Below are positions 21,266-39,950 of a stretch of DNA of 64,000 nucleotides, in pieces. The notes below the pieces were generated by a model. It ran no database searches. It had not been told where the DNA came from and saw only the letters and a program-made list of their open reading frames with translations. The stretch spans positions 1 to 64,000 of IMG/VR virus record IMGVR_UViG_3300044213_000107; one strand, 5' to 3'. The position numbers and the translations under genes were made by a program. Each line of letters opens with the position of its first letter. Position 1 is the stretch's first letter.

Positions 21266-21360
21266 GTGCTCACTTTCGGGATGTTTGGGCACGACTCCTA
21301 CTAATCCCGGGCCAGCAGCCGGCCCACACCTCCGTTACGAATAACGGGTCCTAAGGGTGT
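21266..21360 (-). ncRNA. Structured GC-rich RNA candidate (multi-stem, possible pseudoknot), unassigned
   Basis: ACACC/GGUGU closing CCGUUA-UUCG-UAACGG; GGGCCGG-CUG-CUGGCCC; GGGAU...AUCCC; 3' GUGAGCA can pair with UGCU. Confidence 0.65.
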
Positions 21361-22502
21361 TTTAGTAGCTGATACGCTTCGGGAAATGTATCGGCAAAAT
21401 TCTCTTTACGTAGGGAATCATACCCATCGGTAACACGTTTAAATTCTTGTAATAACTCCGGCGAATTATCGACACCCATCTCAAGCTGTGGAATCAAATG
21501 TTTCACAGCAGTATTGGTTAATTTATTTTTAACAGCTTGTTTCATTGAATCAGGTGCTATACGCATATTTAAGTGCAATGGTCTATGCAGTATATTAAAT
21601 CCACATGTTATTCCACGTTGGTTAAAGTACTGCCATATATCACTGGCATAATATATATTTAACAAACTTACAGTAACACATACACTTAAAACAACATTTG
21701 GATTTTCTGCAGCTAACTGTTGATATTTTGATAAGTTAACTTCAATCTCTGACCATTTTGCAGGATAACGCATATACTCAAATTGTTTGCCAATGCCATC
21801 CATGCTAATACCTATATCAACACTACGAAACTTTTTAAAAATTTCATAGTAATCATCTCTCCATACGGTTCCGTTAGTGTTTATGTGTATATCTACCGTA
21901 TCGGCTAAAGGCAGTTGGCTTGCAGCAGCAAGTAGTGACCAAAGAGGTTCAATTAGCAACGGCTCGGCGCCGTACAGGTCATAATAAACTATATCTTGAG
22001 CCCATTGATTTAATGTAGCCCAGGTTGCACTATCATCGGCAAAACTTTGTTGCGCACCACGAAACTGTTCTAGATAAACGGGATACGATGTTTCATCCGC
22101 TTCCACATGATAGTAATCACGAATCCAACGACTGCTCGTATGAGGGTTACAGTGCCTACAAGCAAGGTTGCACAAATTACCGGGCTTGAGCATAATAACA
22201 CGAGGATGGTCCGTAGGTATAACATTGGCAAACTGTTCATTACTTAATAACCTTTTACTGCGCCTTCCGGCTGCTTCTTCGTCCCAGCAGTCTTGGCAGT
22301 TGTGATGTTGCTGATTTGATTTTAATGCACTGGCAATTTCTTGTCTTGTGGGACTCGCCCATGCGTCTTCTAGCGTATGTTGATCAAGTCGAATAAGTGA
22401 TTGATCGTGATGTTGAAACCAAACACGACTTTGATTACACATTGATGCATAGCCACCATTTTGTGTACTTAGTCCTAGATCGGCTAACACACAATAGGTC
22501 AT
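21351..22502 (-). CDS. Radical SAM protein (Twitch/SPASM-like)
   Basis: CNLACRHC, GAEPL, INTNG, SMDG; start revised to MTYC. Confidence 0.9.
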   Translation of the reverse strand: MTYCVLADLGLSTQNGGYASMCNQSRVWFQHHDQSLIRLDQHTLEDAWASPTRQEIASALKSNQQHHNCQDCWDEEAAGRRSKRLLSNEQFANVIPTDHPRVIMLKPGNLCNLACRHCNPHTSSRWIRDYYHVEADETSYPVYLEQFRGAQQSFADDSATWATLNQWAQDIVYYDLYGAEPLLIEPLWSLLAAASQLPLADTVDIHINTNGTVWRDDYYEIFKKFRSVDIGISMDGIGKQFEYMRYPAKWSEIEVNLSKYQQLAAENPNVVLSVCVTVSLLNIYYASDIWQYFNQRGITCGFNILHRPLHLNMRIAPDSMKQAVKNKLTNTAVKHLIPQLEMGVDNSPELLQEFKRVTDGYDSLRKENFADTFPEAYQLLKHP

Positions 22503-23635
22503 TGAAATTCGGGCCAAAGATCGGCAAATTTTAGTGGACTATCGGGCCAGTATGTGTGTTCTTGTTCTGCATGCCAATCGTATAAGGTTTGAGTTTCTGC
22601 ATCGGGATTGTTGGCCTTAACTAAATTAGCAGCTTGCTCTTTAAAAAATTCTGCGGACTGTGGATTATATTTGATACTTTTAATTAATTCTCGTGCAGAT
22701 TGTTGCATAAATTTGTTAGGCAAACTAAATGCACTCAATCTATGTGGATGTGTTAGTTCTGCCCAACGTATTGGTGGCAGTTGGTTGTCTGCAAAATATT
22801 CATGTATGCTGCTAATATCTAAACAATTATACACACTAAACTGACCAGTTACATTAACACTTTGATGTGGTGCAGCATCTTTTAATGTTTGTATGTTGTG
22901 CAGCATCAACTGCCAGTCTGCCCCATGCCGCACATATTCAAAACGATCTTCTATGGTTTCAAAACTTATATCCCAGGTAACATTGTCAAGCTCGGTTAGT
23001 CTACGAAATATTTTATTTTTTTCTAATGGAACACTAAGATTGGTTATTACATTTATGTGTACTGAATTGTCAATGACATCTAGTAGTAGTTCGTTTTCTT
23101 TTTGTAACAACGGCTCACCACCAAGTAGTCCTAGATTTTTAATTGTGCTGCGATGCTGAACAATATAATCCATTATGCCTTGGATGTCAGCATAGTCTGC
23201 ACGTTCAAGTGGGTGTCCTTTTAATTGAGCCCAAATACTGCTAGCTTCTGACCCACAGTATACACAACTTAAATTACAGGTATTTGACCAACGAATGTCG
23301 AGATTTTGTAGTGGTTGATCTTTTAAACTAACAATAGGTATAGTTCGACGTTCGGCAATATCGTTATACCATGTGCGTTCTGTTACAGGAGTGTGTCGTT
23401 CGCGATCAATGCAAATGCGGCAATTATCATGTTCTTGATTATTAACAATAGCTGTTTTAATTTCATCTAGTAGACTATTGTTAATTGCAGAATCTAAACT
23501 AACTTCTCGCAGATTTCCCAATTCTGTTTGGCCAGCACAACAGGTCTTATAAACACCCAACGGGTTTATATGTATATTTGTCCAAGGAGCATAGCAAAAG
23601 TTTGACCCAATATCCGGGGTTAAATTGATTGTCAT
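22499..23635 (-). CDS. Radical SAM protein (Twitch/SPASM-like)
   Basis: CNLSCVYC, GGEPL; CYAPW..CC..CRIC. Confidence 0.9.
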   Translation of the reverse strand: MTINLTPDIGSNFCYAPWTNIHINPLGVYKTCCAGQTELGNLREVSLDSAINNSLLDEIKTAIVNNQEHDNCRICIDRERHTPVTERTWYNDIAERRTIPIVSLKDQPLQNLDIRWSNTCNLSCVYCGSEASSIWAQLKGHPLERADYADIQGIMDYIVQHRSTIKNLGLLGGEPLLQKENELLLDVIDNSVHINVITNLSVPLEKNKIFRRLTELDNVTWDISFETIEDRFEYVRHGADWQLMLHNIQTLKDAAPHQSVNVTGQFSVYNCLDISSIHEYFADNQLPPIRWAELTHPHRLSAFSLPNKFMQQSARELIKSIKYNPQSAEFFKEQAANLVKANNPDAETQTLYDWHAEQEHTYWPDSPLKFADLWPEFQ

Positions 23636-26267: not shown

Positions 26268-27795
26268 GTAAACTTAAAGCTTGATCTTGTTGGCTAGCAT
26301 ATGCTTTATGTAGTTTATCAATATAACCCAGGTTTCGTAATATTTTAAATGATAAGTTTTCTACGCCAAACTCGCCATGTTTGTCTAATCCCGATCTGCG
26401 CATTTGTTTTAACTTATATACAATTCGTATAATATCTTCGGGGTCGTTGGCTTGATTTACTGCAACATCTATTTGTTTCATTAGATCACGTGTTTTTGCA
26501 TTTATAGCACGATCATCAATTTGTGGGCGATCAAATTTGGGTTCCTTAATCCACTTTCCGTGTAATAAACTGTAAACACCGGCACTAACAGGAGGATTGT
26601 TAACATCCTCGACATACATTTCTACTTCATGTCCGTATATGGTAATATCATGTTCGGTATTCCAAATACGCTTTTTCGCAGAATAAAATTTTTCTGCTAG
26701 GTCATCACATTTTAAGTCTGCGTATTTGGTTACTACATGTACATCAAAATCACTGTATTTGGTATAGTTGTAGTTAGCCATACTTCCTGTTAATACTACA
26801 TCAATGACACGAAAATCTGGTATGTCTAAACTGTGTGTAAAAAATAGTGCAGTTTTTAATAACTGTAATTGCACCCGTGGATCAATGTCATTATCATGCC
26901 AGACCCGCGGATTTAATGCATCGTGGTAAGCAACATTGTTCTGTACATAACTTTCAGCAACAATAGGTTTATTTTTATAATATTCTGGAAAGCGTCGCCC
27001 AAACTCTCTCATGATAATGCCGGCAACTGCATTAGCTTCATTTTCTTGATCACTGCCAGTTTCGCCGTCACTGTAGTTTAAATTGCCTGTTTGATCCTGG
27101 CGAAAGTGTGTCAACTCATGGCCCATGGTTCTTACAATGTCTAACGGATGACGATTCGCAATACCAAGAACCATTTCACTTTGATCTGCATCATAATAAC
27201 CGAATGTTGGTTGTCCACCTTGTGGCGGTATTTCTCGAACTAGCTTTATTCGAGGTACATGTGTAATACCAATTATCTCTGCGGCCATTGGCAAAAAGTC
27301 CTGCATCATAGCGATAAAATCGTCGTCGCTGGTTTCAAGAAACTCATTGGCAATAGACTGACAAATTTTTCTAATTTTAGGATTAGACGTTTCAACTTCG
27401 GCAAACTGTCGTTGCTCTCCGTGCTGTGTTGGATCCTTATATCCGCAGTAGACTTTTTTAACTGTGCTTTGATTTATTAAATCTGTACAACTTGATTGAT
27501 ATCTATCATCCATGTCTTGATTGCATGGACTTAGTGTTGTGACAATGATACTACCTTCGGGTATATCACCATACTTGTTTTGATAGTTGTCAATTGCTAC
27601 TCTTTCGGCATGCACACGTTGACCATCTGGTCCTGGAGAATTCACACCAACTGCAATACGATGGTCGGGATCTAATACACAGGCTGCAACTAATCCAAAG
27701 TCTTGTTGGCTTTTTTGTCCATTGATGACTGCCTGGCAAAGTTCAATCAATACCGAGTCTAAATGCTGATAGTTACTGACTTCATTGTCTTTCAT
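26263..27795 (-). CDS. Three-domain fusion: Zn-deaminase + HExxH metallopeptidase-like + pol-beta-type nucleotidyltransferase
   Basis: HAE..TLSPC..C; HELTH..E.EANA; LTGS..DFDVH..E.YVE; start revised to MKDNE (ATGA-type coupling). Confidence 0.8.
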   Translation of the reverse strand: MKDNEVSNYQHLDSVLIELCQAVINGQKSQQDFGLVAACVLDPDHRIAVGVNSPGPDGQRVHAERVAIDNYQNKYGDIPEGSIIVTTLSPCNQDMDDRYQSSCTDLINQSTVKKVYCGYKDPTQHGEQRQFAEVETSNPKIRKICQSIANEFLETSDDDFIAMMQDFLPMAAEIIGITHVPRIKLVREIPPQGGQPTFGYYDADQSEMVLGIANRHPLDIVRTMGHELTHFRQDQTGNLNYSDGETGSDQENEANAVAGIIMREFGRRFPEYYKNKPIVAESYVQNNVAYHDALNPRVWHDNDIDPRVQLQLLKTALFFTHSLDIPDFRVIDVVLTGSMANYNYTKYSDFDVHVVTKYADLKCDDLAEKFYSAKKRIWNTEHDITIYGHEVEMYVEDVNNPPVSAGVYSLLHGKWIKEPKFDRPQIDDRAINAKTRDLMKQIDVAVNQANDPEDIIRIVYKLKQMRRSGLDKHGEFGVENLSFKILRNLGYIDKLHKAYASQQDQALSLR

Positions 27796-28226
27796 CTTAG
27801 GCTTGACTTTAACATCCACCCGTGTTTTTCATGTGCATCCATGCGTTCAGCAAGGAAGTTACTAAATCCATGTTTGCCTTCGGCTTCGGCTAAATCATAG
27901 ACTATTTTAAACATACCAATGGCTTTTTGATTGTCTTCAATAAGTTGATGTACCATGGCCATCTGTGGCGGTATTTCTGTTTCATCTTCGATTTGTGTTA
28001 GTACACTAAATCTAGTGTAGCTGGCCGGCACAAATGCTCCTAGACTGCGAATCTTTTCTGCAAAGTCGTCAATCGCATCATAAACTTCTTCGTAGATTTT
28101 ACCAAAAAGACCGTGATACTCATAGAAGTCAGCACCAGTTACATTCCAGTGATAGTTGTGTGCTTTTAGATAAAAGCTGAATTCTGTGGCAAATGCTATT
28201 TTTGCTGCTTTTTGTAGTTCATCCAT
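27792..28226 (-). CDS. dps: Dps/ferritin-like DNA-protection protein
   Basis: HNYHWNVTG..F...H, D..AEKIR.LG, HEKHGWML. Confidence 0.92.
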   Translation of the reverse strand: MDELQKAAKIAFATEFSFYLKAHNYHWNVTGADFYEYHGLFGKIYEEVYDAIDDFAEKIRSLGAFVPASYTRFSVLTQIEDETEIPPQMAMVHQLIEDNQKAIGMFKIVYDLAEAEGKHGFSNFLAERMDAHEKHGWMLKSSLR

Positions 28227-28228
28227 TG

Positions 28229-31207
28229 TTATACCTCATATCCTGCTTGACGCATTTCTAACAACATACTATCAAGTAAGGAATCATAATCTTCTTTAAT
28301 GTGTCCACCTACAGGACTGGTGCTGTCTACTGCCACCGGCATGTTGCTGTCTTCTGTTTGTCGAGCAGGTCTGCAATCAAGTATAGTAGCATTATGTCGT
28401 TCTGCCCAATCACGTGCGGCAGATTCACTGCTAAACACTCGTGTTGCTAATACACGTTGATCTCTACGATTATACACATAATAACGACATTCTACTGCGG
28501 TGTTTTCGGCCAAATGCCATGCCGCTTGGTCCGCATCATGATCTGGTCTTACTGCTTTATTTTTTTGTACTTCGGCAGCACCTAGTCCTAGTTTGGCTCG
28601 ACGCTTTTTTTCTGCCATTTGTGTTTCGTAGTCTTTTATGCCGTGATAAACTTCACCGTGTGGTGGTTGCAAAGGACGATCCTTTGACACTAGATTTTTA
28701 ACATCAGAGTAGTTTATTTTTGGTTTCTTTTTAGGACTTTGAAATCCGAAGATACTTTCTTGTTCAATGTCTTCGTGCCATTGATTGTTGCTGCCGGCCC
28801 AAGCATCTCCTTGATCGCTATGCCATTGGTTGTCAGCGCCTGTCCATGCATCTTCGTCTACACTTTGCTCACGAATAAAATCGTCATCGCCGTAGTGTAA
28901 TTCCCAAGGCTCAATAAAATCATCGTCATCACGTTGTCTTGGTGCTATACCAGTGCCATGACATACTCTGCAACTGGTATTATCAGTAAGTCCTTCGCCA
29001 GTGCCACGACATGTATAACACTCGTTATCAGCATCTTCTGGGCCTTCGGACACTTTTGCTACTGGTGGTTTTTGCTTGGCTATCTCTAATTCATTTGTTG
29101 TAACAACTTTAAATTGTGCGCCGCCACCGCGTGCCAATAGTGTTTTAATTTTATCTGCGGAACCATAGTTATCACCGGCAACTACAACAGTTCCATCGGG
29201 TTGGATTTGTTTTATAACTCTAGTAACAAAAGCATGATCTGTATTAGGATACTGTTTTTGCACTGCCGCTAGTCCACGTTGCAATGCTTGTGAGGCTTGT
29301 TGCATTTGTGGAGTTTGCTGACTATCTTCCGCCACACCTTGCTTACCTCCATGGACGGCATTTAATAATAATTGGTATAGTGCTTTTTTAGCAAGATCAA
29401 ATGATGGGAATACTTGTTTGTTTTTTGTACTTCTGTTTACGTAAATTTTGTATACATTACCTTGTTTTACTAAACGATATTCGTTTCCATTTATTGTTTT
29501 AAGGAATAATAACTTAATATGTGCGGATGGATCATCTGATATTGTAAACTCACCTTCCGCCAATTGTTTACCGGTCAAAGTTATAGTTTTATCCGGATTC
29601 ATTCTAATAATTCTGTCGTTTAATAAACTTGTATAAACATGACGTTGTGCAGGTGTAATACCATTTCTATCTATCTTAAAAGGCAGATTATGATTTTCTG
29701 CTGTTTCAATGGCCTTTATTAATAATATTTTACCATGTCCCAACCCTCTGACGTCGGAATGTATCATGGCATCATTCTCTACATCATTTGTTTCAGGGAA
29801 ATATTGATAGGCAAAAAATCCTGCTTCTCTACCGTCTACGGCCAGTTCAACTTCAAATGATGTTTCGTAGTTATCTCTTGAGAATATGTTAAAAGATGGT
29901 TGTGATTGTTCTGAGCCTTCCGCCACACCTTCTTTGTATGTAACAGGATCAGTTTGTTTTAAAAATTCGTCAGGATCAAAATCTTTTACACTATAGGATT
30001 CGATATAGTCTTTATAATTTGATAATTTTTTAATTATCTCGGGGGAATTGTTAATCCACATAGCACGAGGAACATCTAATACAGTATATTGTCCTTCTGA
30101 CATTAATTTTATATTGTTATAATGTTCAGGAATCCCTGGCATAAATGTAGTAAAATATTTTAATAAACTCATTAGTGATGTATAATTTTTATACAAAGGA
30201 TCTGTTTTGGAAGTAGTAGACATTGACACCGCGGTTGCAATAGCAGGCATTATTGGACCATTTGGGGCAATAACCTCATCGATTAATTGCTGACGCAAAT
30301 TCTCTTTAATTTTTGCATCTTCAGAATTAGTAGTATTTTGATTACTAGTATTATTTTTTGACGGGTTCACTGTAGATTTTTGTGATGCCGGTTCCGTAGG
30401 ATTGATATTATTTTGCCATGAACTTCTAGTATTTTTTTGTTGAAAATTATCTTTTGATTGAACATATTTTTTAATGTAATCGTATACGGCCTCTGCTCCA
30501 GAAAATGCTGCAGTCGCTATTCCTATACTTGCTAAATCGATACCTACTTTCTTTAAAAAATTTCTACGATTGTTATTAGGTGACTGGTTGGGTTGTGCTT
30601 TAGGCGGCTCTTGCGAAGCACGCTCTGCATTCACTGCGTCCAATATTTCTTTTTCGGTAATGTTGTACTTACGCATCAATGCCGATAATTGTCTTTTCAA
30701 TAAATCTGTTTCGTGCTGAGGTTTATTATGACTATTTTGTATTTCTTTATATAATTGAATACAACTATTTAACGCCCCATCTCTTGTACCAGCCTCCGCT
30801 ACACCTTGTAAACTCTTGCGAATAGCAGCAGAAGTTTTATCAATCTGCTTACCAGTGGCCCGCATTACATTGCCCATACGGTCTGTGGCTTGGCGGTGCT
30901 TGCCAGCAGCAGCAAGTTCGTCTGCAGACTTTCGAGCCTTTTGTTTATAACTAGACAATGTGTCTGAACTTAGTTCGTCAACTATTTCATCTTGGCTTTC
31001 ATCTGCAGGTCTTGTATAAACTTGTTGTACATTTTTTGGATCTTTATCAAGGATTACATTCGGCAATGGTGCATTTTTATCTTTTGCAAAATGCTGGCGC
31101 ATGTCTGCAACGCTAGGTGTTGGTTTAGGTGCAGGTTTTTTAGCAGGCTGAAAATGAAAAATTCCTTCTACAGATTTTTCTTTTTCAAATAAATCGCTGA
31201 TAAACAT
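28229..31207 (-). CDS. 992-aa modular polyprotein, putative internal head protein (includes a GNAT module, DnaJ-type Zn finger, Tat-like segment)
   Basis: MFISDLFE N-terminus; modules joined by QGVAEA/EGVAEG/QLAEG/QGVAED/KVSEG; RGLGHGK acetyl-CoA motif; CYTCRGTG/CRVCHGTG. Confidence 0.7.
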   Translation of the reverse strand: MFISDLFEKEKSVEGIFHFQPAKKPAPKPTPSVADMRQHFAKDKNAPLPNVILDKDPKNVQQVYTRPADESQDEIVDELSSDTLSSYKQKARKSADELAAAGKHRQATDRMGNVMRATGKQIDKTSAAIRKSLQGVAEAGTRDGALNSCIQLYKEIQNSHNKPQHETDLLKRQLSALMRKYNITEKEILDAVNAERASQEPPKAQPNQSPNNNRRNFLKKVGIDLASIGIATAAFSGAEAVYDYIKKYVQSKDNFQQKNTRSSWQNNINPTEPASQKSTVNPSKNNTSNQNTTNSEDAKIKENLRQQLIDEVIAPNGPIMPAIATAVSMSTTSKTDPLYKNYTSLMSLLKYFTTFMPGIPEHYNNIKLMSEGQYTVLDVPRAMWINNSPEIIKKLSNYKDYIESYSVKDFDPDEFLKQTDPVTYKEGVAEGSEQSQPSFNIFSRDNYETSFEVELAVDGREAGFFAYQYFPETNDVENDAMIHSDVRGLGHGKILLIKAIETAENHNLPFKIDRNGITPAQRHVYTSLLNDRIIRMNPDKTITLTGKQLAEGEFTISDDPSAHIKLLFLKTINGNEYRLVKQGNVYKIYVNRSTKNKQVFPSFDLAKKALYQLLLNAVHGGKQGVAEDSQQTPQMQQASQALQRGLAAVQKQYPNTDHAFVTRVIKQIQPDGTVVVAGDNYGSADKIKTLLARGGGAQFKVVTTNELEIAKQKPPVAKVSEGPEDADNECYTCRGTGEGLTDNTSCRVCHGTGIAPRQRDDDDFIEPWELHYGDDDFIREQSVDEDAWTGADNQWHSDQGDAWAGSNNQWHEDIEQESIFGFQSPKKKPKINYSDVKNLVSKDRPLQPPHGEVYHGIKDYETQMAEKKRRAKLGLGAAEVQKNKAVRPDHDADQAAWHLAENTAVECRYYVYNRRDQRVLATRVFSSESAARDWAERHNATILDCRPARQTEDSNMPVAVDSTSPVGGHIKEDYDSLLDSMLLEMRQAGYEV
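29326..29340 (-). repeat. GVAE repeat copy 1 (AAGGTGTGGCGGAAG)
   Basis: Exact 15-bp match to copies 2, 4 and 5. Confidence 0.9.
29913..29932 (-). repeat. GVAE repeat copy 2 (GAAGGTGTGGCGGAAGGCTC)
   Basis: 20 bp identical to 32790-32809. Confidence 0.9.
30792..30808 (-). repeat. GVAE repeat copy 3, degenerate (CAAGGTGTAGCGGAGGC)
   Basis: Near match encoding QGVAEA. Confidence 0.75.
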
Positions 31208-32631
31208 TATTTCATTGCTCCTGCAGATTTAACCAAGTTTGCTAATTGTTGTCCTTGGGGACCTTGTAAAATTTTACCTAGTGCTGGCGCCATTTTACTT
31301 ATAGCAGCTTGATCAGCGGTGCTCATAGGTGCACCTGTTTCGGCTTTTTGTAATGCTGGTCCAGTTTTAGCTGGATCTACATCAACACCGGCAGTTTTTA
31401 GAACGCCAAGATTCTTTTGTTGTAATGCTTGTTGTTGTTGTAGTTTTGCAGCATCTTGAGGTTTGTTTGCACCACCAGCGGTTGTTTGTGCCATGGTTGT
31501 TTGTGCAGTGGGTGTGAGATCTTCTGCCATATCCTCATCCATGCTGCCTTTTAATAACCCTGCTTTTTCCATAGCTGCCGACGATTCGGGCCCTAACTTT
31601 TGTACACCACTAGCAACACCTTTAGCATTGATGGCAATATATGGAGCAGGTGTCCTTACCATTCCGTTGTTAGACACAATGTATGTGTTGTTTTGTGTAT
31701 CCAATACCGCTTTAACTGTTTGTCCAGCAAAAGGTACAGTAGTTAAAGTAAATCCATTGCCTAGATCTTGTTGTGCATGTGCACCTAGCGCACCCAATGC
31801 CATGGCCCCGCCAACAACTGCATCTTTCCAGCCTTCCGCCACACCTTCATTAGGCACACAGTTGTTTACACGCACACCACCTTTGATCTTTGTACCTTCT
31901 TTGTGCTTACCAGTCCAGCACTTGGGATCTAGGCGTGTTTTAATTTCGTTTACAGCTGCACCTGTGGGTACAGCACTTTCGCAATTCCACTTGCGTAGTG
32001 CTTTATTGATACGGCTATTTGGATCTCTCTTGGTCTTGGCTCCAGTACGATGTTTCTTCATACCTTTCATACGAGCACAAAAACTCTTACGACGCTTTGA
32101 GGCCTTTGAGCCTTTCTTTAACTTGCTGGGTTTGGTTGTGACTGCAGTTTGTAGTTTGCTACCAGGATGACTACGACGATAACTTGCTACACCTTTTTTA
32201 TTCAAGCCGCCATTTTTATTCTTACCTGATGACTTTTGCCAGGCTTCTGCTTCGGCTAATAATTCTTCATCATCACAGTCATCGAAATCTTCCCAGATTA
32301 GATCTGCGTCAACACCATTTTGTTCAGCAATTGACTCAATCATTTCTTCAATAATGTCAAACTGCGAATTTAACAATTGTTCTTCTACTAGTAGATCCGC
32401 CTGAAACTGTTGCCAAGCTTCACTGATTTCCCGATGAACATTTCGTTCTTTGCTGGTACGATCAAGTTCTGGTAGTACACTTTCGGCGGCACCAACAAGG
32501 CGACCTTTGAACGGATGTTGCTTACCACCAGTCTTGGCTTTTTCAGTTCCACGCACTTGATCGCCGGGTTTTTGTCCTACCGCTTGTCCGGCGAACTTAT
32601 CCATTGATTCTAATAGTTTACGCATGTCCAT
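31207..32631 (-). CDS. Modular polyprotein, putative internal head protein (basic AW..GKN..GGLN module, CW.G...NCV module, signal-peptide-like module)
   Basis: MDMRKLLES start; junctions LLAE, VNE, EGVAEG, MDEDMAED. Confidence 0.7.
   Translation of the reverse strand: MDMRKLLESMDKFAGQAVGQKPGDQVRGTEKAKTGGKQHPFKGRLVGAAESVLPELDRTSKERNVHREISEAWQQFQADLLVEEQLLNSQFDIIEEMIESIAEQNGVDADLIWEDFDDCDDEELLAEAEAWQKSSGKNKNGGLNKKGVASYRRSHPGSKLQTAVTTKPSKLKKGSKASKRRKSFCARMKGMKKHRTGAKTKRDPNSRINKALRKWNCESAVPTGAAVNEIKTRLDPKCWTGKHKEGTKIKGGVRVNNCVPNEGVAEGWKDAVVGGAMALGALGAHAQQDLGNGFTLTTVPFAGQTVKAVLDTQNNTYIVSNNGMVRTPAPYIAINAKGVASGVQKLGPESSAAMEKAGLLKGSMDEDMAEDLTPTAQTTMAQTTAGGANKPQDAAKLQQQQALQQKNLGVLKTAGVDVDPAKTGPALQKAETGAPMSTADQAAISKMAPALGKILQGPQGQQLANLVKSAGAMK
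31831..31848 (-). repeat. GVAE repeat copy 4 (GAAGGTGTGGCGGAAGGC)
   Basis: 18-bp exact match to copies 2 and 5. Confidence 0.9.
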
Positions 32632-32632
32632 A

Positions 32633-33130
32633 TTAATATACACCTTTTCCTACTTGCACCACCTGAGGTCTACGAATAACATTGCTGATCTTTTTTGGTT
32701 TTCCAGTTGGTGGTTTTCCACCTAATTCACCGACCACCGCACCAATGCTGGCTGCACCAGTTGCACCACCAGTTGCATCTTCTTTTAAGGAGCCTTCCGC
32801 CACACCTTCCTCTAACACAGCCGTTAATTGTTGTTGAGCTGACTCCATAGCAAACTCGGGCATGCCTTCGGCTTCTTGGCTTAATTGATCATACTCTAAA
32901 TATTCACGCACAGTTTTTAAATAGTCTGCAGCAATGCTGATCTTTTCACTGACCCATCCATCGAGCCCGTCTAGTTCTGATACTCGTTTTAATAGTTTGT
33001 GCAATTCAATTGCATCTTTTGCAGCGTGATAACATTCTTCACGAGCCATTTGTACTTCGTGGTCTTTGTGCATAGCATGTGCATCATCGCCGATAAATTC
33101 ATTTTCTACGATAAAATCTGTGGTTTTCAT
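32633..33130 (-). CDS. Putative internal head protein
   Basis: MKTTDFIVE closely resembles the T4 capsid-targeting sequence MKTYQEFIAE; contains EEGVAEG. Confidence 0.7.
   Translation of the reverse strand: MKTTDFIVENEFIGDDAHAMHKDHEVQMAREECYHAAKDAIELHKLLKRVSELDGLDGWVSEKISIAADYLKTVREYLEYDQLSQEAEGMPEFAMESAQQQLTAVLEEGVAEGSLKEDATGGATGAASIGAVVGELGGKPPTGKPKKISNVIRRPQVVQVGKGVY
32790..32809 (-). repeat. GVAE repeat copy 5 (GAAGGTGTGGCGGAAGGCTC)
   Basis: 20 bp identical to 29913-29932. Confidence 0.9.
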
Positions 33131-33152
33131 GGTAATTATCCTGGGTATAGTG

Positions 33153-33159
33153 TATTTAG
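33153..33159 (-). promoter_or_regulatory. Late promoter (CTAAATA) for the internal-protein block
   Basis: TAAATA consensus. Confidence 0.55.
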
Positions 33160-33426
33160 TTAGCCGATATTGAACACAGTATCTGAACTTTGACCGTTAA
33201 CCTGTACATTTCTTACACTAAATGTGCCGTTAGCATCGAGTGCTTCTAGTCTTACTGCATGTGTTCCGGGGTCAAGATTACAAATAACTGTTTCTTGCAG
33301 ATATATTTCTGCTGGCGGAAATCTAAAAGTTCTTTCGGTGATTAAATCACGATCAACATAAATCCTGTATGCCGGAGCAGCATCTGCGTAATCACAATAG
33401 ATATCTGCAGAGATCTTAACTTCCAT
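33160..33426 (-). CDS. Hypothetical beta-rich protein
   Basis: ORF track; weak similarity to 34524-34994 (P.Y/F.I.V, L..G...L). Confidence 0.65.
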   Translation of the reverse strand: MEVKISADIYCDYADAAPAYRIYVDRDLITERTFRFPPAEIYLQETVICNLDPGTHAVRLEALDANGTFSVRNVQVNGQSSDTVFNIG

Positions 33427-34492
33427 GTTGTGCTCGCAGTTGTTTTAGTTGATGTTGCAACTTACCTAATGTTTCTACTAAACGAAATGCACGAGCATTT
33501 TTCATTGGTGTATCTGGGTGCACATCCCGGGTTAGGCTCATGCTATAACGTGGGTCTCGCGCCATTTTAGCATTGCTGGCGACAACACCAACTCCGGCTG
33601 CTTCATTAACTGACAAATCTTTTATTAACTTTGATAATTGTTTTATCTGTTGCGCAACACGTTCTAGTTTTTCTTCGGTGCTGTGTTCTTCTTGTTCAAC
33701 ATGATCAACATCACGTTCTTCTTTGTCCAACACATACATCGCTAGTGCTTGATCGTCGGTTTTTGCTATTGGATACATAACACGTGCACGTCTGACTAAA
33801 AGATCAACTTTGGTGTTAGAATGCTCGTGGCTTTCGGCAACTGCTTTAGGTATTTTATCTAGAATTAACCCAATTTCTGGATCTGCACGACCATACAATT
33901 GTTTAATGTATTCTAATCTTGCAGTAGGATCATCCCGTACCATGTTCCAGAGATTCCTGCAGTCTGTACCATGGCTAGCATCGTATGTTTTGCCACCGAT
34001 TACTAAACTGGCCTTTACTTCAGGAACAATAATAACATAGCCATGTTGGTCAGCAGTAGTGGCTTCTTTGATGTTTTTCCAGGTTTTGAAGTAAGTTTCG
34101 TCACCGGCACGTATGCTTTTTGCAGGATTGTCTCGTTTATAAACAGCATCGGGTTGGAGTCTATCTGCATCTGGCGCCCCAACTGCAGTGATAAAAATAG
34201 TATTGGTTTTATCTATGCTGTCTGGTAATGCGTACACATTACTGGTTTCTACAACACGATCCTGCGGAACGCCGGCGGCAGTCATTAGTTGTATTTTATC
34301 GCTAAAATTAAAAGGACTTTTAGCGCCATCAGTTTTGTTGCTGGTTAAAATATACACCGCATCACGGCCAAATTTAGCCTGCAGTTGTTGAAAAACCGCA
34401 GCATGTCCACGGTGAAAAGGTTGAAAGCGGCCAGGATAAGTTACTACTATTCTGGGACCGCTTTCTTTTATAAACATTTCAGCAATAAACAT
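33416..34492 (-). CDS. Cytidylyltransferase-like (HxGH) protein with capsid-targeting-like N-terminus
   Basis: YPGRFQPFHRGH, SPFNFSDK; MFIAEMFIKE N-terminus; VAE/VNE junctions in C-terminal part. Confidence 0.8.
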   Translation of the reverse strand: MFIAEMFIKESGPRIVVTYPGRFQPFHRGHAAVFQQLQAKFGRDAVYILTSNKTDGAKSPFNFSDKIQLMTAAGVPQDRVVETSNVYALPDSIDKTNTIFITAVGAPDADRLQPDAVYKRDNPAKSIRAGDETYFKTWKNIKEATTADQHGYVIIVPEVKASLVIGGKTYDASHGTDCRNLWNMVRDDPTARLEYIKQLYGRADPEIGLILDKIPKAVAESHEHSNTKVDLLVRRARVMYPIAKTDDQALAMYVLDKEERDVDHVEQEEHSTEEKLERVAQQIKQLSKLIKDLSVNEAAGVGVVASNAKMARDPRYSMSLTRDVHPDTPMKNARAFRLVETLGKLQHQLKQLRAQHGS

Positions 34493-34523
34493 AAAAAATC
34501 TCGCCTATTGCTGTATTTAGCAG

Positions 34524-34994
34524 TTACATATTTTCCAGTAACCAGATGTAAAATGGACTTTCAAACGCAATCTTATATGCGCCATTCCACCCTAGATTAA
34601 CACATTCACGCATTGTTGTAATAGTTTTGCCGTTGTTGACTACTGGTGTATCTAATACATATTCACTGGCTTTGTGTCGTAAGTTACCAATATCAATATC
34701 GTCAATTATAATGCTTTCTATGTTTAGTAACATATCTTGCAAAATAGTCCATGTGCCATCTGCATCTGTTTCTGTTACAGTATCGCCATCGGCTTTGTTT
34801 AGCAAAACAACAGCAAGCACCGCAGGACCTTCAGGTAAATCAACAGAAAATTCATGTGTTTCTACTGATCCCGACTCGCCCGATATAGTAGTCCTTACAT
34901 ATTCAGTGTCATTTACCCGAATAGCAAATTCTGGTCGTTTTGACCAGTATGTGCCCGAAACGCCAATTTTAAAATTTAATGCTTCTGTGGTCAT
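34524..34994 (-). CDS. Hypothetical protein
   Basis: ORF track; ATGA coupling. Confidence 0.7.
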   Translation of the reverse strand: MTTEALNFKIGVSGTYWSKRPEFAIRVNDTEYVRTTISGESGSVETHEFSVDLPEGPAVLAVVLLNKADGDTVTETDADGTWTILQDMLLNIESIIIDDIDIGNLRHKASEYVLDTPVVNNGKTITTMRECVNLGWNGAYKIAFESPFYIWLLENM

Positions 34995-36114: not shown

Positions 36115-36831
36115 TTATTCAGGCCTATGCACCAGTTCATGAATTTTTCTCACAAACCCGGGACTAATAATAGACAAAAAAGTAGCTATCTTTTCATCGT
36201 TGGCATAAAAAAATGCGCCATAAAGATAATTAAAAATTTGAAATTGGCGTATGGTGCCTGCACTTAGTTTAACATCATCTTGTGAATTTAAATAGTTAAA
36301 AATCGATGATCTTACATCATCGGGATAATATCCATCTCTGATCATGAATTTAAATTTATACTCAGGTTTTTGTTTTCTAATAATTTTGTCGCTACTGAGT
36401 ATTTCTAAATCTTCGTTGTCTTTGGGCCATGTTACACTTTGGATTTTTGACTGTAGAGATTCGTTCATGGCAACAGCAACCTCTCGCAATACCTCTTGGT
36501 CTTCGGTATAAATCTGCACATAAGGATCTTCAATACGAATTTTTATTTTTGATCCAAACGAATCTTTAATGTCTCGAAGATTTTGTAGATCTGCAGAGGA
36601 AAATAAGTCAACATTTCTACGTGGACGCCAACTACCACCAAAATTATAATGCCGAATATTAAAAATCATAGCATCTAACTCGGCGGATATATTGCCAGTC
36701 CTAGCATCTGTTACTACACGACTGCCGTGCACTACTAGTTCCATGCGACAATAAAAACGATTGTAGTATCGTTTTTTTGTAAATAGGTAGTTAATGTTTT
36801 TATTGATCTTGCGCCAAAACGATGAAGCCAT
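36115..36831 (-). CDS. Hypothetical protein (start uncertain)
   Basis: ORF track. Confidence 0.6.
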   Translation of the reverse strand: MASSFWRKINKNINYLFTKKRYYNRFYCRMELVVHGSRVVTDARTGNISAELDAMIFNIRHYNFGGSWRPRRNVDLFSSADLQNLRDIKDSFGSKIKIRIEDPYVQIYTEDQEVLREVAVAMNESLQSKIQSVTWPKDNEDLEILSSDKIIRKQKPEYKFKFMIRDGYYPDDVRSSIFNYLNSQDDVKLSAGTIRQFQIFNYLYGAFFYANDEKIATFLSIISPGFVRKIHELVHRPE

Positions 36832-39088
36832 CGGTGTCTACTCCTGGTGCTGATTCAGATGCCGAAAAGCCAACAACATCAAATTCAATTTTATTATCTC
36901 TATAGTCAACACTGATTATACTGCCATTTACAACATTATCAAAAAGAATCTTTTTACTTAGTGGCACTTTAATTAAGTCTGTGATCTTGCGTTGTACAGG
37001 TCTTGCACCCATCTTAGGATCAAAACTTTCTTTTACTATATACTCGACTGCGGATTCAGTAAGTCTAATTTTTATATCTTTTTCAGACAACAGTTCGTTA
37101 AGTTCTACAATAAACTTAGCAACAATTTTCCTCATGCTTAGATCTGTTAGTCGGTTAAACTTAACAATACCATCTAGCCTATTGCGAAACTCTGGTTTAA
37201 AGAAGTTTTTAACAGCCTTGTCATCCTCGCCTGACTTTTGTAAATCTCTACCAAAGCCAATTGAGTTTTTGTCATTGTCTGCGGCACCTAGATTGCTGGT
37301 TAAAATAACAACAGTATTTCTACAATCAGCTTTCTTACCATTACTGCTAGTTACTACACCTTCGTCCATAAGACTTAACAATAAATTGCTAACATCTGGA
37401 TGTGCTTTTTCAATTTCATCAAACAAAATAATGCTATTGGGATTCTGTTCAATGTCTCTGATCAACATACCACCACCTAAATTACCATCATCGTAGCCTA
37501 CATATCCCGGGGGAGCACCGATTAGTTTAGCAACGGTGTGTTTTTCTTGATATTCGCTCATATCATATCTCAGCAGTTTCATCCCAAGATTTTCTGCTAG
37601 TAGTTTAGCAAGTTCTGTTTTGCCTGTTCCGGTCGGGCCCAGGAATAAAAACGACCCAATTGGTTTATTAATAGATTTAAGTCCGGCCTTGCTGATATAA
37701 ATTTTTTCTAATACATTATCAACTGCTTCGTTTTGGCCAAACAAACGATCTTTAATGTTGTGTTCAAGACTAGAAATATTTTTAACACCGTCTGCACTGC
37801 CCATGATTTGATCAACGGGAATTTTTGTTGATTTACTTATTGCTTCAATAACATGTCCACGCAATACTGTAAAATCTGTTTGACGTATTTTTAATCTTGC
37901 AGCACAGGTATCGATTAAATCAATTGCTTTGTCTGGTAGTTTTTTATCTGCTTGATATCTTACACTTAGATCAACTGCGGCATCAATTGCTTCATCGGAG
38001 ATTTTACCAATGTGAAATTCTTCAAATTTATCACGAAGTCCACGCAAAATATCTTTGGCAACTTTTGGTGTTGGCTCGTCAATAGTAACACGTTGGAAAC
38101 GACGCATCAACGCACGATCTTTATCGAAACTTTGATTGTATTCTTCCCAGGTAGTACTTGCAATAACCTTGATCCTACCTTTTGTTAGTGCTGGTTTGAT
38201 CATATTTGCAAAATCTACACTACTGCCACTACTACCACTGCCAGCACCTTGCATTTGATGTGCTTCGTCAATAAACAAAATACATTTGCCTTTGGCATTA
38301 AGTGATGCCAACACTACTTGTAGTTTTTCTTCAAACTCGCCGCGATATTTACTGCCTGCTAATAAACTGCCAATATCAAGATTATAAACAGTATAGTCTT
38401 TTAGATATTCGGGTACATTTTTGTTAATAATGTTTAACGCCAGGCCTTCGGCAATAGCAGTTTTGCCTACACCAGGATCTCCGACCATTAGAATGTTACT
38501 CTTATTGCGCTTTGCTAAAATTTCTGTAATTTCTTGCAGTTCAGTTTCTCGGCCAATAACAGGATCAATACCACCTTCTTGGGCAACAATATTTAGATTG
38601 TCACAATAGTGTTCTAGAATTTCATCAACTTTACCTGCTGTCACTTTGTTTTTCCCACCAAGATGATCGTATGTTTTATTAAAATGCTCAACTAGTCCTG
38701 CACGATCTAACCCGTACTTGACCATAAAATAATGTGTATAACTATTTTTTTCTGCATGCATGCTCAAAAATAAATCCATGATGGTGATATCACTGCGGGC
38801 ACTAAACAATACTTGAGTTACTGCACGATTAAACACACGTTCTAGTGTATGTGTTTTCTTTGGTTCAACTTCTTCTCGAACCAAATAAGTTTGATTTAAC
38901 AAATATGTATGTACATCAAGAATTAATCCTTCGATGTCGGCACCATAGTTCCGAAGAAACTTGTTAAATGTTTCATATTTTAACATACTTAAAAATAAAT
39001 GCTCGAGCGTTACATACTCGTGTTTGTAGCCTTTGGCGATAGCACTAGATTCAGCAATGATGTGTTCAATTTCGGGAGTTGTGTTCAT
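36800..39088 (-). CDS. clpA: ATP-dependent Clp protease ATP-binding subunit ClpA
   Basis: HEYVTLEHL N-domain, GDPGVGKT, FIDEAH, LPDKAIDL, GPTGTGKT, FDEIEKAHP; no ClpB middle domain. Confidence 0.93.
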   Translation of the reverse strand: MNTTPEIEHIIAESSAIAKGYKHEYVTLEHLFLSMLKYETFNKFLRNYGADIEGLILDVHTYLLNQTYLVREEVEPKKTHTLERVFNRAVTQVLFSARSDITIMDLFLSMHAEKNSYTHYFMVKYGLDRAGLVEHFNKTYDHLGGKNKVTAGKVDEILEHYCDNLNIVAQEGGIDPVIGRETELQEITEILAKRNKSNILMVGDPGVGKTAIAEGLALNIINKNVPEYLKDYTVYNLDIGSLLAGSKYRGEFEEKLQVVLASLNAKGKCILFIDEAHQMQGAGSGSSGSSVDFANMIKPALTKGRIKVIASTTWEEYNQSFDKDRALMRRFQRVTIDEPTPKVAKDILRGLRDKFEEFHIGKISDEAIDAAVDLSVRYQADKKLPDKAIDLIDTCAARLKIRQTDFTVLRGHVIEAISKSTKIPVDQIMGSADGVKNISSLEHNIKDRLFGQNEAVDNVLEKIYISKAGLKSINKPIGSFLFLGPTGTGKTELAKLLAENLGMKLLRYDMSEYQEKHTVAKLIGAPPGYVGYDDGNLGGGMLIRDIEQNPNSIILFDEIEKAHPDVSNLLLSLMDEGVVTSSNGKKADCRNTVVILTSNLGAADNDKNSIGFGRDLQKSGEDDKAVKNFFKPEFRNRLDGIVKFNRLTDLSMRKIVAKFIVELNELLSEKDIKIRLTESAVEYIVKESFDPKMGARPVQRKITDLIKVPLSKKILFDNVVNGSIISVDYRDNKIEFDVVGFSASESAPGVDTDGFIVLAQDQ

Positions 39089-39098
39089 TATAAAATAT

Positions 39099-39950
39099 TT
39101 ATTTGGTTGTTAGATTTCTAATAGTGTCTAGTTGGTCTGGCGTTAAGTCGGTTGGAACTACGATGTTCACTAATAACATTAAATTTCCTCGGTGATTTTG
39201 ATTTAGTGCATATAATCCTTGTTGTGATAATCTTAATTTTGTACCATGTTGCGTACCAGGTGGAATAGTAAATTCGAACATTTTACCATCAATACCTTGC
39301 ACAACTGTTGCAGTACCAATTATAGCATCTAAACAGTTTATGTCAACAGGTTTGACTAAATCTAAATGATCGATAGCATATTCGGTTTGTGGCATTACTA
39401 CAATTACTACATATAAATCACCACGCGGTAAACTTTCGAAAAAATTATCTCCTAGGCCGGGATATTTTATGGTGCTACCAGAATGTACACCTCTCGGGAT
39501 TTGAACTTCAACTGCTTGTCTTTGTCCATTTGTTGTTTGGACACTTACTGTTTTTGTTTGTTGGGTTAATGTACTTGCTAGATCGATTGCAACTTCAACT
39601 CGTAGATCTTTGTTTTTACGGGGTTGCCTAAATGCTGCAAATGGATCACTGCCACCAAAGTTAAAATTAAAATTTCTAAATAACTCGTCCATTCCCGGGG
39701 GCATGCCATTCATTTCTTGGCCATTTACAGTAAAGCGAACTCCGCCAAAATTACCTTGACGTTCAGCGTTGTATTGTGCTCTGCGATTGTCGTCGCTTAA
39801 GGTATCATAGGCCGTTTGAATGCGTTGAAATGTAGCGGTATCTCCACCTTTATCTGGATGGTGTTGACTTGCTAGTTTTCTATAGGCTCGTTTAATTTCG
39901 TCGGGACCGGCTGATTCTGCTACGCCCAACGTTTCGTAGTGATTTTCCAT
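39099..39950 (-). CDS. DnaJ/CbpA-class chaperone
   Basis: HPD J-domain, G/F region, C-terminal GDLYV; no Zn finger. Confidence 0.92.
   Translation of the reverse strand: MENHYETLGVAESAGPDEIKRAYRKLASQHHPDKGGDTATFQRIQTAYDTLSDDNRRAQYNAERQGNFGGVRFTVNGQEMNGMPPGMDELFRNFNFNFGGSDPFAAFRQPRKNKDLRVEVAIDLASTLTQQTKTVSVQTTNGQRQAVEVQIPRGVHSGSTIKYPGLGDNFFESLPRGDLYVVIVVMPQTEYAIDHLDLVKPVDINCLDAIIGTATVVQGIDGKMFEFTIPPGTQHGTKLRLSQQGLYALNQNHRGNLMLLVNIVVPTDLTPDQLDTIRNLTTK

What the first reader, a model, noticed from the sequence alone, without database searches (positions are those of the whole stretch)
31774..31833. Cryptic signal peptide exposed by cleavage at the GVAE repeat
Seen: immediately after EGVAE comes GWKDAVVGGAMALGALGAHA-QQ, i.e. 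a short charged n-region, hydrophobic h-region and AxA site, but internal in a 470-aa protein. Inference: capsid proteolysis unmasks an export or membrane-insertion signal so the ejected module reaches the inner membrane or periplasm (ejection channel, superinfection exclusion).
Basis: partly seen in the sequence, partly recalled or inferred. Interest (0 to 1): 0.6.

Follow-up and report, generated by a model that had tools for sequence, protein, structure and literature searches.

The report
Hidden export signal in phage polyprotein
In an uncultured jumbo phage, a signal-peptide-like stretch sits directly behind a conserved GVAE cutting site inside a modular protein, and the same slot in related phages holds textbook Tat export signals. 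Cutting therefore probably exposes an address label that sends a pre-made phage protein to the host envelope, though this is untested.

Summary
Window 31774-31833 (minus strand) encodes a 20-residue stretch with W-K-D, an uncharged Gly/Ala-rich core and A-H-A. It follows EGVAE directly, inside a 474/478-aa protein.

The record is a 261-kb jumbo-phage contig related to PA5oct, and it encodes a T4 gp21-type (S77) prohead protease. GVAE fits that enzyme's L/I-x-E rule. It is expected 1.5 times in the proteome, but 7 copies lie in just four genes.

The strongest support is comparative:
- The downstream 85-aa domain recurs in many metagenomic phage proteins.
- In about 15 of them, the slot between a GVAE-type site and the domain holds a canonical twin-arginine signal. 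Four pass TIGR01409 at internal positions.
- The window's version lacks the arginine pair. It recurs after such sites in seven other sequences, ahead of different cargo, and is conserved as protein while its codons drift.

The architecture argues for cleavage that exposes an export signal. Cleavage, packaging and export are all untested, and this copy is a weak, non-Tat signal.

One side finding: the GVAE linker is conserved at the nucleotide level in more than 120 viral contigs and marks where modules are swapped.

The parts
31207..32643 (-). Modular polyprotein gene (478 aa from GTG; likelier 474 aa from ATG 32631). Order: leader, DUF6321 module, GVAE site, signal-like peptide, domain A, DMAE site, C-terminal domain B.
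32608..32631 (-). N-terminal leader MDMRKLLE with an L-L-E site. The leader is conserved at the start of another polyprotein (L129). Candidate capsid-targeting propeptide.
   Evidence: T4 rule from PMC9026906
31987..32226 (-). DUF6321 (PF19846) module, aa 140-219. It is the only part with relatives in cultured cyanophages and pelagiphages.
31834..31845 (-). GVAE, the predicted prohead-protease site (cut after Glu270). The DNA is the invariant GGTGTGGCGGAA followed by GGC.
31774..31833 (-). The finding: a 20-aa signal-peptide-like stretch (aa 271-290) with a W-K-D n-region, a Gly/Ala-rich uncharged core and an A-H-A c-region. It lacks the twin arginine ('GWK type').
31552..31773 (-). Domain A (aa 291-364). 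It starts QQDLGNGF. The model shows six strands plus one helix (pLDDT 76). No known fold or family matched. This is the cargo of the signal.
31522..31533 (-). DMAE (aa 371-374), a degenerate cleavage motif. The closest homologues have GVAE, GIAE or KVAE at this position, ahead of the same DLTPTA continuation.
31210..31521 (-). Domain B (aa 375-478), helical. In all 31 homologues it lies at the extreme C-terminus. Function unknown; it may be a scaffold- or capsid-binding tail.
28229..31207 (-). Neighbouring 992-aa polyprotein with three GVAE sites (30794-30805, 29918-29929, 29327-29338), a CTS-like start, a GNAT-like module and a DnaJ-type zinc-finger module.
30488..30577 (-). Internal Tat-like motif in the 992-aa protein (RRNFLKK, uncharged core, A-E-A; aa 212-240). 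The nearest upstream hydrophobic-x-Glu site is 28 residues away.
   Evidence: (TIGR02811 E = 0.016, below cut-off)
32633..33130 (-). 165-aa protein with a T4-CTS-like start (MKTTDFIVE) and one GVAE site (32795-32806), followed by a Gly/Ala/Thr-rich tail.
33416..34492 (-). 358-aa cytidylyltransferase-like protein with a CTS-like start (MFIAEMFIKE) and an AVAE site. Candidate capsid-packaged enzyme.

Best explanation
The gene encodes a polyprotein of independent modules joined by QGVAE|G-type linkers. Inferred mechanism:
1. The precursor is taken into the prohead through its leader, as T4 internal proteins are.
2. The phage's gp21-type (S77) protease cuts after the Glu of each linker.
3. The cut at Glu270 turns residues 271-290 into an N-terminal signal peptide, attached to an 85-aa beta-rich domain.
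4. After ejection into the next host, the signal directs that domain to the inner membrane or periplasm, where signal peptidase can cut after A-H-A.

In relatives the route would be Tat. For this copy, which lacks the arginine pair, it would be Sec-like or simple membrane insertion.

Shown: the sequence architecture, its recurrence, and the protease gene. Inferred: packaging, cleavage, ejection and export.
For: 1. An S77 protease, a scaffold-like gene and a T4-type major capsid gene lie in the same record. T4 gp21 cuts after L/I-x-E, and 10-residue N-terminal targeting peptides load ejected proteins (PMC9026906).
2. GVAE clusters 7-fold in four genes against 1.5 expected genome-wide. Degenerate sites keep [VIM]-[AS]-E while their codons change.
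3. CTS-like N-termini occur in 18 of 325 ORFs, against 6.5 +/- 2.5 in shuffles. One related ORF starts MRATEFIIEGVAE.
4. Homologues of domain A carry RRGFL(K/R)G signals between the GVAE-type site and the domain. Of 22 genuine RR motifs, 21 lie 2-4 residues after a hydrophobic-x-Glu site. Four reach the TIGR01409 cut-off at internal positions.
5. The GWK-type peptide recurs right after such sites in L112, L117, L081, L023, L054, P0055 and P0062, ahead of different cargo. Between contigs, 4-10 of its 21 codons differ synonymously, so it is conserved as protein.
6. The A-x-A site lies 2-7 residues before the conserved start of domain A. Homologues without a signal have the domain directly after a CTS-like leader.
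7. Uncharged runs in these polyproteins start within 12 residues of a [VIM][AS]E site in 8 of 33 cases, against 8% expected.
Against: - No experiment or proteome exists for this clade.
- The window copy has no TIGR01409 or Pfam Tat hit. Its n-region has net charge 0, and its core is Gly/Ala-rich with low hydrophobicity.
- P3 is Val rather than the Leu/Ile of T4.
- Only about 2% of GVAE sites are followed by a hydrophobic run, so this is a property of particular modules and not of the site.
- S77 was found in only 6 of 11 large GVAE-bearing contigs. It is absent from one that CheckV rates 99% complete.
- The nucleotide-level conservation of the linker shows that something other than protease recognition also constrains it.
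- The host is unknown, so Tat/Sec competence is assumed.
Confidence: 0.4

Rival explanations
1. The Gly/Ala-rich stretch is a small-xxx-small (glycine-zipper-like) membrane helix. It anchors or oligomerises the module in the inner membrane, for example as part of an ejection conduit, rather than acting as a cleavable export signal.
For: The core has an A-xxx-G-xxx-A spacing. Its sequence is unusually well conserved for a signal peptide (W-K-[DN]-V-V-A-G-x-A-M-x-L-G-A-L-G) across contigs with different cargo. The twin arginine is absent.
Against: There were no Pfam Gly-zipper hits. Homologous slots hold canonical cleavable Tat signals with A-x-A.
Confidence: 0.15
2. The polyprotein is cut in the cytoplasm of the producing cell, by the phage protease outside the capsid or by another protease. 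The signal-bearing module is then exported in that same cell, for example for exclusion or lysis control, and is never packaged.
For: Internal signals need cleavage, but nothing shows where that happens. The genes lie more than 220 kb from the head module on this contig. A Clp/Lon-like ATP-dependent protease and a DnaJ gene lie 4-7 kb away.
Against: In T4, gp21 acts on proteins already built into the prohead core (PMC9026906). CTS-like leaders are enriched and sit on these very genes. Some relatives have a CTS-like leader directly in front of a Tat signal (L022, L053).
Confidence: 0.15
3. The signal-like stretch is a relic of a captured secreted-protein gene that was fused into the polyprotein, and it no longer functions.
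For: Modules are shuffled freely at the linkers, so a host-derived signal-plus-domain cassette could have been swept in. This copy has lost, or never had, the arginine pair.
Against: Signal features (RR motif, core length, A-x-A, position) are kept in homologues whose domain A is 34-47% identical to the window's. The GWK peptide stays conserved while its codons drift, and it is attached to several unrelated cargos.
Confidence: 0.1
4. GVAE is not a protease site. It is only the translation of a nucleotide-level element (a recombination linker or RNA motif), and the protein stays intact with the hydrophobic stretch buried or acting as a flexible spacer.
For: The DNA is GGTGTGGCGGAA in 216 of 256 sites, although GTG and GCG are rare codons. 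All 6 sites were identical in a sample found by protein similarity alone. Module combinations change exactly at the motif.
Against: Degenerate sites change nucleotides but keep [VIM]-[AS]-Glu. The motif also closes short N-terminal leaders. Internal Tat signals at residue 94-714 of long proteins would make no sense without cleavage.
Confidence: 0.1

Closest known systems
T4 internal proteins (IPI, IPII, IPIII, Alt) with capsid-targeting sequences, processed by gp21
   Same: An S77 protease gene is present. Sites are hydrophobic-x-Glu. N-terminal leaders of about 10 residues resemble the T4 CTS. Cargo is variable and includes enzymes (GNAT-like, nucleotidyltransferase-like), as expected of ejected host-takeover proteins.
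   Different: These are long polyproteins of many modules rather than single small proteins. The extended site is QGVAE|G with Val at P3 and is fixed at the DNA level. Some modules begin with export signals, which is not described for T4 internal proteins.
Ejection and inner-body proteins of phiKZ-like phages (e.g. SPN3US), cut at several sites by the prohead protease
   Same: Large phages package many proteins that are cleaved at short x-x-Glu motifs and ejected (abstracts of PMC5694885, PMC10052503, PMC7411985).
   Different: The phage lineage differs (the capsid protein here is 68% identical to that of PA5oct and Vibrio phage 2.275.O). Neither signal peptides behind sites nor conserved linker DNA has been reported for those phages.
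Bacterial twin-arginine (Tat) signal peptides (TIGR01409)
   Same: Homologues carry S/D-R-R-G-F-L-K/R-G, a Gly/Ala-rich core and A-x-A, and pass the curated cut-off. The window copy shares the weakly hydrophobic core and the A-x-A site.
   Different: They lie inside precursors, up to residue 714, directly behind a protease motif and not at a translated N-terminus. The window copy lacks the arginine pair.
PeSL cassettes that mediate modular shuffling between genes in T4-type phages (Arbiol et al. 2010; recalled from memory, not checked here)
   Same: Short conserved DNA elements flank exchangeable units in hyperplastic regions.
   Different: Here the element is in frame, inside genes, only about 18 nt long, and also encodes a putative cleavage site.
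Viral polyproteins of eukaryotic RNA viruses, cut at short consensus sites
   Same: One ORF, many products, a fixed short cleavage consensus, and new termini that gain function after cutting.
   Different: This is a DNA phage with a capsid-confined protease and accessory cargo modules.

Membership tests
Sec-type cleavable signal peptide | Positively charged n-region | tested here: inconclusive
   G-W-K-D has net charge 0, or +1 only with the new amino terminus. Sister copies have K-N, K-S-K or K-Q-K.
Sec-type cleavable signal peptide | Uncharged hydrophobic core of 7-15 residues | tested here: met
   Fourteen uncharged residues with a Kyte-Doolittle mean of 2.0 over 11. The core is Gly/Ala-rich and so only weakly hydrophobic.
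Sec-type cleavable signal peptide | Small residues at -3 and -1 (A-x-A) | tested here: met
   A-H-A precedes Q-Q. The conserved domain starts 2 residues later.
Sec-type cleavable signal peptide | Located at the N-terminus of the translocated chain | not testable with these tools
   It is internal in the precursor (aa 271-290) and becomes N-terminal only if GVAE is cut.
Sec-type cleavable signal peptide | Positive score from a trained predictor, or export in a reporter fusion | not tested
   No SignalP or TatP was available, and no experiment was done.
Tat signal peptide (TIGR01409) | S/T-R-R-x-F-L-K motif and a model score above 16.7 bits | tested here: not met
   The window protein has no hit. 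Homologues P0039, P0016, P0046 and P0052 score 23.8, 20.0, 17.7 and 17.0 bits.
Substrate of a T4 gp21-type prohead protease | Cognate S77 protease in the genome | tested here: met
   PF03420 scores 86.9 bits at G000 259614-260063. It is also present in 5 of 10 other large GVAE-bearing contigs.
Substrate of a T4 gp21-type prohead protease | L/I-x-E cleavage motif | tested here: inconclusive
   V-A-E has Val at P3. Variants have I or M. The leader has L-L-E.
Substrate of a T4 gp21-type prohead protease | N-terminal capsid-targeting peptide | tested here: inconclusive
   The leader MDMRKLLE is conserved in another polyprotein. The closest resemblance to the T4 CTS is in the neighbouring genes, not in this one.
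Substrate of a T4 gp21-type prohead protease | Observed cleavage and presence in virions | not testable with these tools
   There is no isolate and no proteome. The cultured relatives PA5oct and Vibrio phage 2.275.O lack the motif.
Glycine-zipper membrane peptides (Pfam Gly-zipper families) | Match to a Gly-zipper profile | tested here: not met
   No such family was found at E <= 0.1 in the Pfam scan.

The most novel reading that the evidence does not exclude
A widespread clade of uncultured jumbo phages keeps arrays of capsid-loaded, injected effector modules as polyproteins. The in-frame 18-nt linkers (consensus CAAGGTGTGGCGGAAGGC) would do two jobs: encode the prohead-protease site, and act as DNA-level junctions that let modules be swapped as cassettes. 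A subset of modules would carry Tat or Sec-like signals exposed only by that cleavage, so pre-made phage proteins would be handed to the next host's own export machinery and reach its periplasm within moments of infection.
Probability: 0.3. Interest if true: 0.85.

Novelty: new variant of a known kind. Interest (0 to 1): 0.7.

Why it matters
Phage proteins that travel in the capsid and are injected with the DNA are known to act in the cytoplasm. If cleavage-exposed Tat or Sec signals are real, phages can also place ready-made proteins in the periplasm or inner membrane of a newly infected cell before any phage gene is expressed.

That would be a new delivery route. It bears on superinfection exclusion, envelope remodelling and counter-defence. 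It would also be an unusual natural case of a Tat signal activated by proteolysis.

The linker's nucleotide-level conservation offers a concrete handle on how phages shuffle protein modules. The linker-plus-signal cassette could also serve as a tool for delivering cargo to the envelope by phage.

Tried and rejected
- **Fold of domain A.** Foldseek against the PDB gave a best E of 0.54. VIA-align wide gave a best Z of 5.2, polo-box-like, within background. The ESM Atlas gave TM <= 0.43 by shape and nothing usable by features. No function could be assigned.
- **Domain B.** The model has low confidence (pLDDT 59) and was not searched.
- **Cultured phages.** tblastn with aa 271-478 found nothing at E <= 0.1. 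The whole protein matches only through DUF6321. PA5oct and Vibrio phage 2.275.O have no GGNGTNGCNGARGG.
- **Literature.** Searches for GVAE-type strings, DUF6321, prohead-protease motifs in jumbo phages, and Tat signals in virion proteins found nothing on this system.
- **Rfam.** Only a chance sub-threshold hit at 28000-34600.
- **Bacterial genomes.** Scanning 185,579 species' genomes with the 18-mer gave 56 loci. All but one are single hits, mostly in high-GC actinomycetes, and are chance-like. The one 3-copy hit is a short contig of a 994-contig 'Bacteroidetes' MAG, so no host could be named.
- **Phage tRNAs.** The 25 tRNAs do not single out the linker's rare codons.
- **General enrichment.** A hydrophobic run follows GVAE in 2.2% of sites against 1.1% in any window, which is weak. 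The signal belongs to particular modules.
- **S77 in G002.** The protease was not found by profile or by protein query in the 343-kb contig G002.

Full report
**What is there.** The window is the first 64 kb of a 260,723-bp linear IMG/VR virus record (CheckV 74% complete, GC 38.5%). The finding lies in a minus-strand gene at 31207-32643, which is 478 aa from GTG. A homologous polyprotein begins with the same MDM(K/R)KL leader, so ATG 32631 (474 aa) is the likelier start. Residues 267-270 are GVAE (31834-31845). Residues 271-290 (31774-31833) read G-W-K-D, then 14 uncharged Ala/Val/Gly/Met/Leu residues, then H-A, followed by Q-Q. This is the most hydrophobic stretch of the protein, but only moderately so.

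**What kind of phage.** The record encodes a Peptidase_S77 (T4 gp21-type) prohead protease, followed by a scaffold-like gene and a major capsid gene. The capsid protein is 68-69% identical to those of Vibrio phage 2.275.O, Sinorhizobium phage Phosso and Pseudomonas phage PA5oct. Twenty-five tRNA genes are present. This is an uncultured jumbo myovirus of the PA5oct-like group.

**GVAE as a site.**
- About 1.5 GVAE are expected in the whole proteome. Eight occur in ORFs. Seven lie in four genes: the 992-aa, 478-aa and 165-aa genes that sit side by side in the window, and a 544-aa gene at G000 90928-92562. The eighth is in a DnaJ J-domain with different codons and looks like chance.
- T4 gp21 cuts after L/I-x-E, and 10-residue N-terminal capsid-targeting sequences load proteins that are later ejected (PMC9026906). 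V-A-E is close to that rule.
- Degenerate versions in this and related proteins (SVAE, DMAE, DVSE, SIAE, GVSE, AVAE) keep [VIM]-[AS]-E.
- N-termini resembling the T4 targeting peptide are enriched in the record: 18 of 325 ORFs against 6.5 +/- 2.5 in shuffles. They sit on the neighbouring 165-aa and 358-aa genes and on the 544-aa gene. One related ORF begins MRATEFIIEGVAE, a short leader closed by the motif itself.
- All of this fits packaged, protease-processed internal proteins, but it remains inference.

**Relatives of the stretch.** A full HMMER search with aa 271-478 against 1.84 billion representatives gave 74 hits and split the region into two units.
- Domain A is about 85 aa and starts at QDLGNGF.
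- Domain B is about 100 aa and lies at the extreme C-terminus in every hit.
- Between the two, the window protein has DMAE, where its closest relatives have GVAE, GIAE or KVAE. Domain B is therefore a separate module.

In about 15 domain-A homologues, the slot between a GVAE-type site and the domain holds a textbook twin-arginine signal: 4-8 residues, then RRGFL(K/R)G, a Gly/Ala-rich core and A-x-A.
- TIGR01409 passes its curated cut-off at these internal positions in P0039, P0016, P0046 and P0052.
- Across all polyprotein sequences in hand, 21 of 22 genuine RR motifs lie 2-4 residues after a hydrophobic-x-Glu site. They precede at least five kinds of cargo.
- In two loci (L022, L053) the Tat signal sits directly behind a CTS-like N-terminal leader.
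- A Tat signal at residue 94 to 714 of a long protein has no use unless the chain is cut just before it. The architecture is therefore itself evidence for cleavage.
- Other homologues have domain A straight after a CTS-like leader with no signal, so the signal is an optional add-on.

**The window's version.**
- It has no arginine pair and no TIGR01409 hit.
- It is nevertheless not a one-off. The same GWK-type peptide follows a cleavage motif in L112, L117, L081, L023, L054, P0055 and P0062, ahead of different downstream sequences.
- Between contigs, 4-10 of its 21 codons differ synonymously while most residues are kept. It is therefore maintained as a peptide.
- Its length (20 aa), its A-x-A site and the 2-residue gap to domain A fit a Sec-type cleavable signal. 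Its net-neutral n-region and weak core do not make it a strong one.
- A small-xxx-small membrane helix is the main alternative reading.

**How general.** Only about 2% of GVAE sites are followed by an uncharged run, against 1.1% of arbitrary windows. However, 8 of 33 such runs in these proteins start within 12 residues of a [VIM][AS]E site, against 8% expected. Signals belong to particular modules and are placed at module starts.

**Side finding: the linker is conserved as DNA.**
- In the record, 6 of 7 sites are GGTGTGGCGGAA, five of them followed by GGC. Yet GTG makes up 13% of Val codons and GCG 7% of Ala codons.
- In those ORFs, 216 of 256 GVAE sites use the identical 12-mer.
- In two loci found by protein similarity alone, all 6 sites use it.
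- The neighbouring signal codons drift freely, so recent common descent does not explain the identity.
- Module combinations switch exactly at the motif. For example, the DUF6321 module ending NNCVP is followed by five different modules.
- My working guess is that the linker also serves as a recombination junction. No tool result tests this.

**What could not be settled.**
- Domain A has a confident small beta-sheet-plus-helix model but no fold match. Domain B is helical and poorly modelled.
- No cultured phage carries these modules or the motif, and no paper in the library mentions them.
- No host could be named.
- S77 was found in 6 of 11 large motif-bearing contigs and not in one rated 99% complete.

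**Verdict.** The best reading (confidence about 0.4) is a capsid-processed polyprotein in which cleavage at GVAE exposes a signal-like N-terminus on a small cargo domain. Relatives use true Tat signals in the same slot. Cleavage, packaging and export all await experiment.

Noticed in passing
window 29327-29338, 29918-29929, 30794-30805, 31834-31845, 32795-32806 (minus); G000 91453-91464, 91732-91743: The GVAE linker is conserved at the nucleotide level (GGTGTGGCGGAA, usually followed by GGC) despite using rare codons. The same in-frame element occurs in more than 120 viral contigs and marks the points where modules are exchanged. The cause is unexplained; a recombination junction is my guess.
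   Followed up: partly
window 30488-30577 (minus), in the 992-aa gene: Internal Tat-like motif (RRNFLKK, uncharged core, A-E-A) about 85 residues after a GVAE site and 28 after an I-T-E site. It is below the cut-offs of the Tat models.
   Followed up: partly
window 33416-34492 (minus): A cytidylyltransferase-like enzyme (PF01467) starts with a T4-CTS-like peptide and has an AVAE site. It may be a capsid-packaged enzyme, as Alt is in T4.
   Followed up: no
window 28229-31207 (minus), aa 444-508 and 727-757; G000 90928-92562: The polyproteins contain GNAT-acetyltransferase-like modules (weak Pfam hits) and a DnaJ-type CxxCxGxG zinc-finger module between GVAE sites.
   Followed up: no
G000 111824-112744 (plus; locus L124): A 306-aa protein with a canonical N-terminal Tat signal, a LysM-like segment and a GH19/lysozyme-like motif (the last two by my reading, not scanned). 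Possibly a Tat-exported endolysin or envelope enzyme.
   Followed up: no
window 31210-31521 (minus) and the C-termini of P0002-P0075: Domain B lies at the extreme C-terminus of every polyprotein that has it (31 of 31). This suggests a role tied to the chain end, such as scaffold or capsid binding.
   Followed up: partly
window 32633-32794 (minus); L128, L091, L010, L065, L079: A second recurrent Gly/Ser/Thr/Ala-rich motif (T-L-E-S then S-G-G-x-T-x-A-G-S-V-A-S-V-S-x-P-x-G-G) occurs near polyprotein N-termini. The tail of the 165-aa window protein resembles it.
   Followed up: no
window 27792-28226 (minus); L128 2179-2628: A ferritin/Dps-like gene lies next to the polyprotein genes in the window and in two unrelated contigs, so the neighbourhood is conserved.
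   Followed up: no
window 36800-39950 (minus): A 762-aa Clp/Lon-like ATP-dependent protease (phrog_4871, E = 5.5e-240) and a DnaJ-like gene lie 4-7 kb from the polyprotein genes.
   Followed up: no
window 21351-23635 (minus): Two adjacent radical-SAM genes, followed by an amidoligase-like gene and a dCMP-deaminase-like gene. This may be a nucleotide or DNA modification cluster.
   Followed up: no
window 31463-32170 (plus): A 235-aa antisense ORF overlaps the finding. It looks like a by-product of the Gly/Ala-rich coding strand and not a gene.
   Followed up: no
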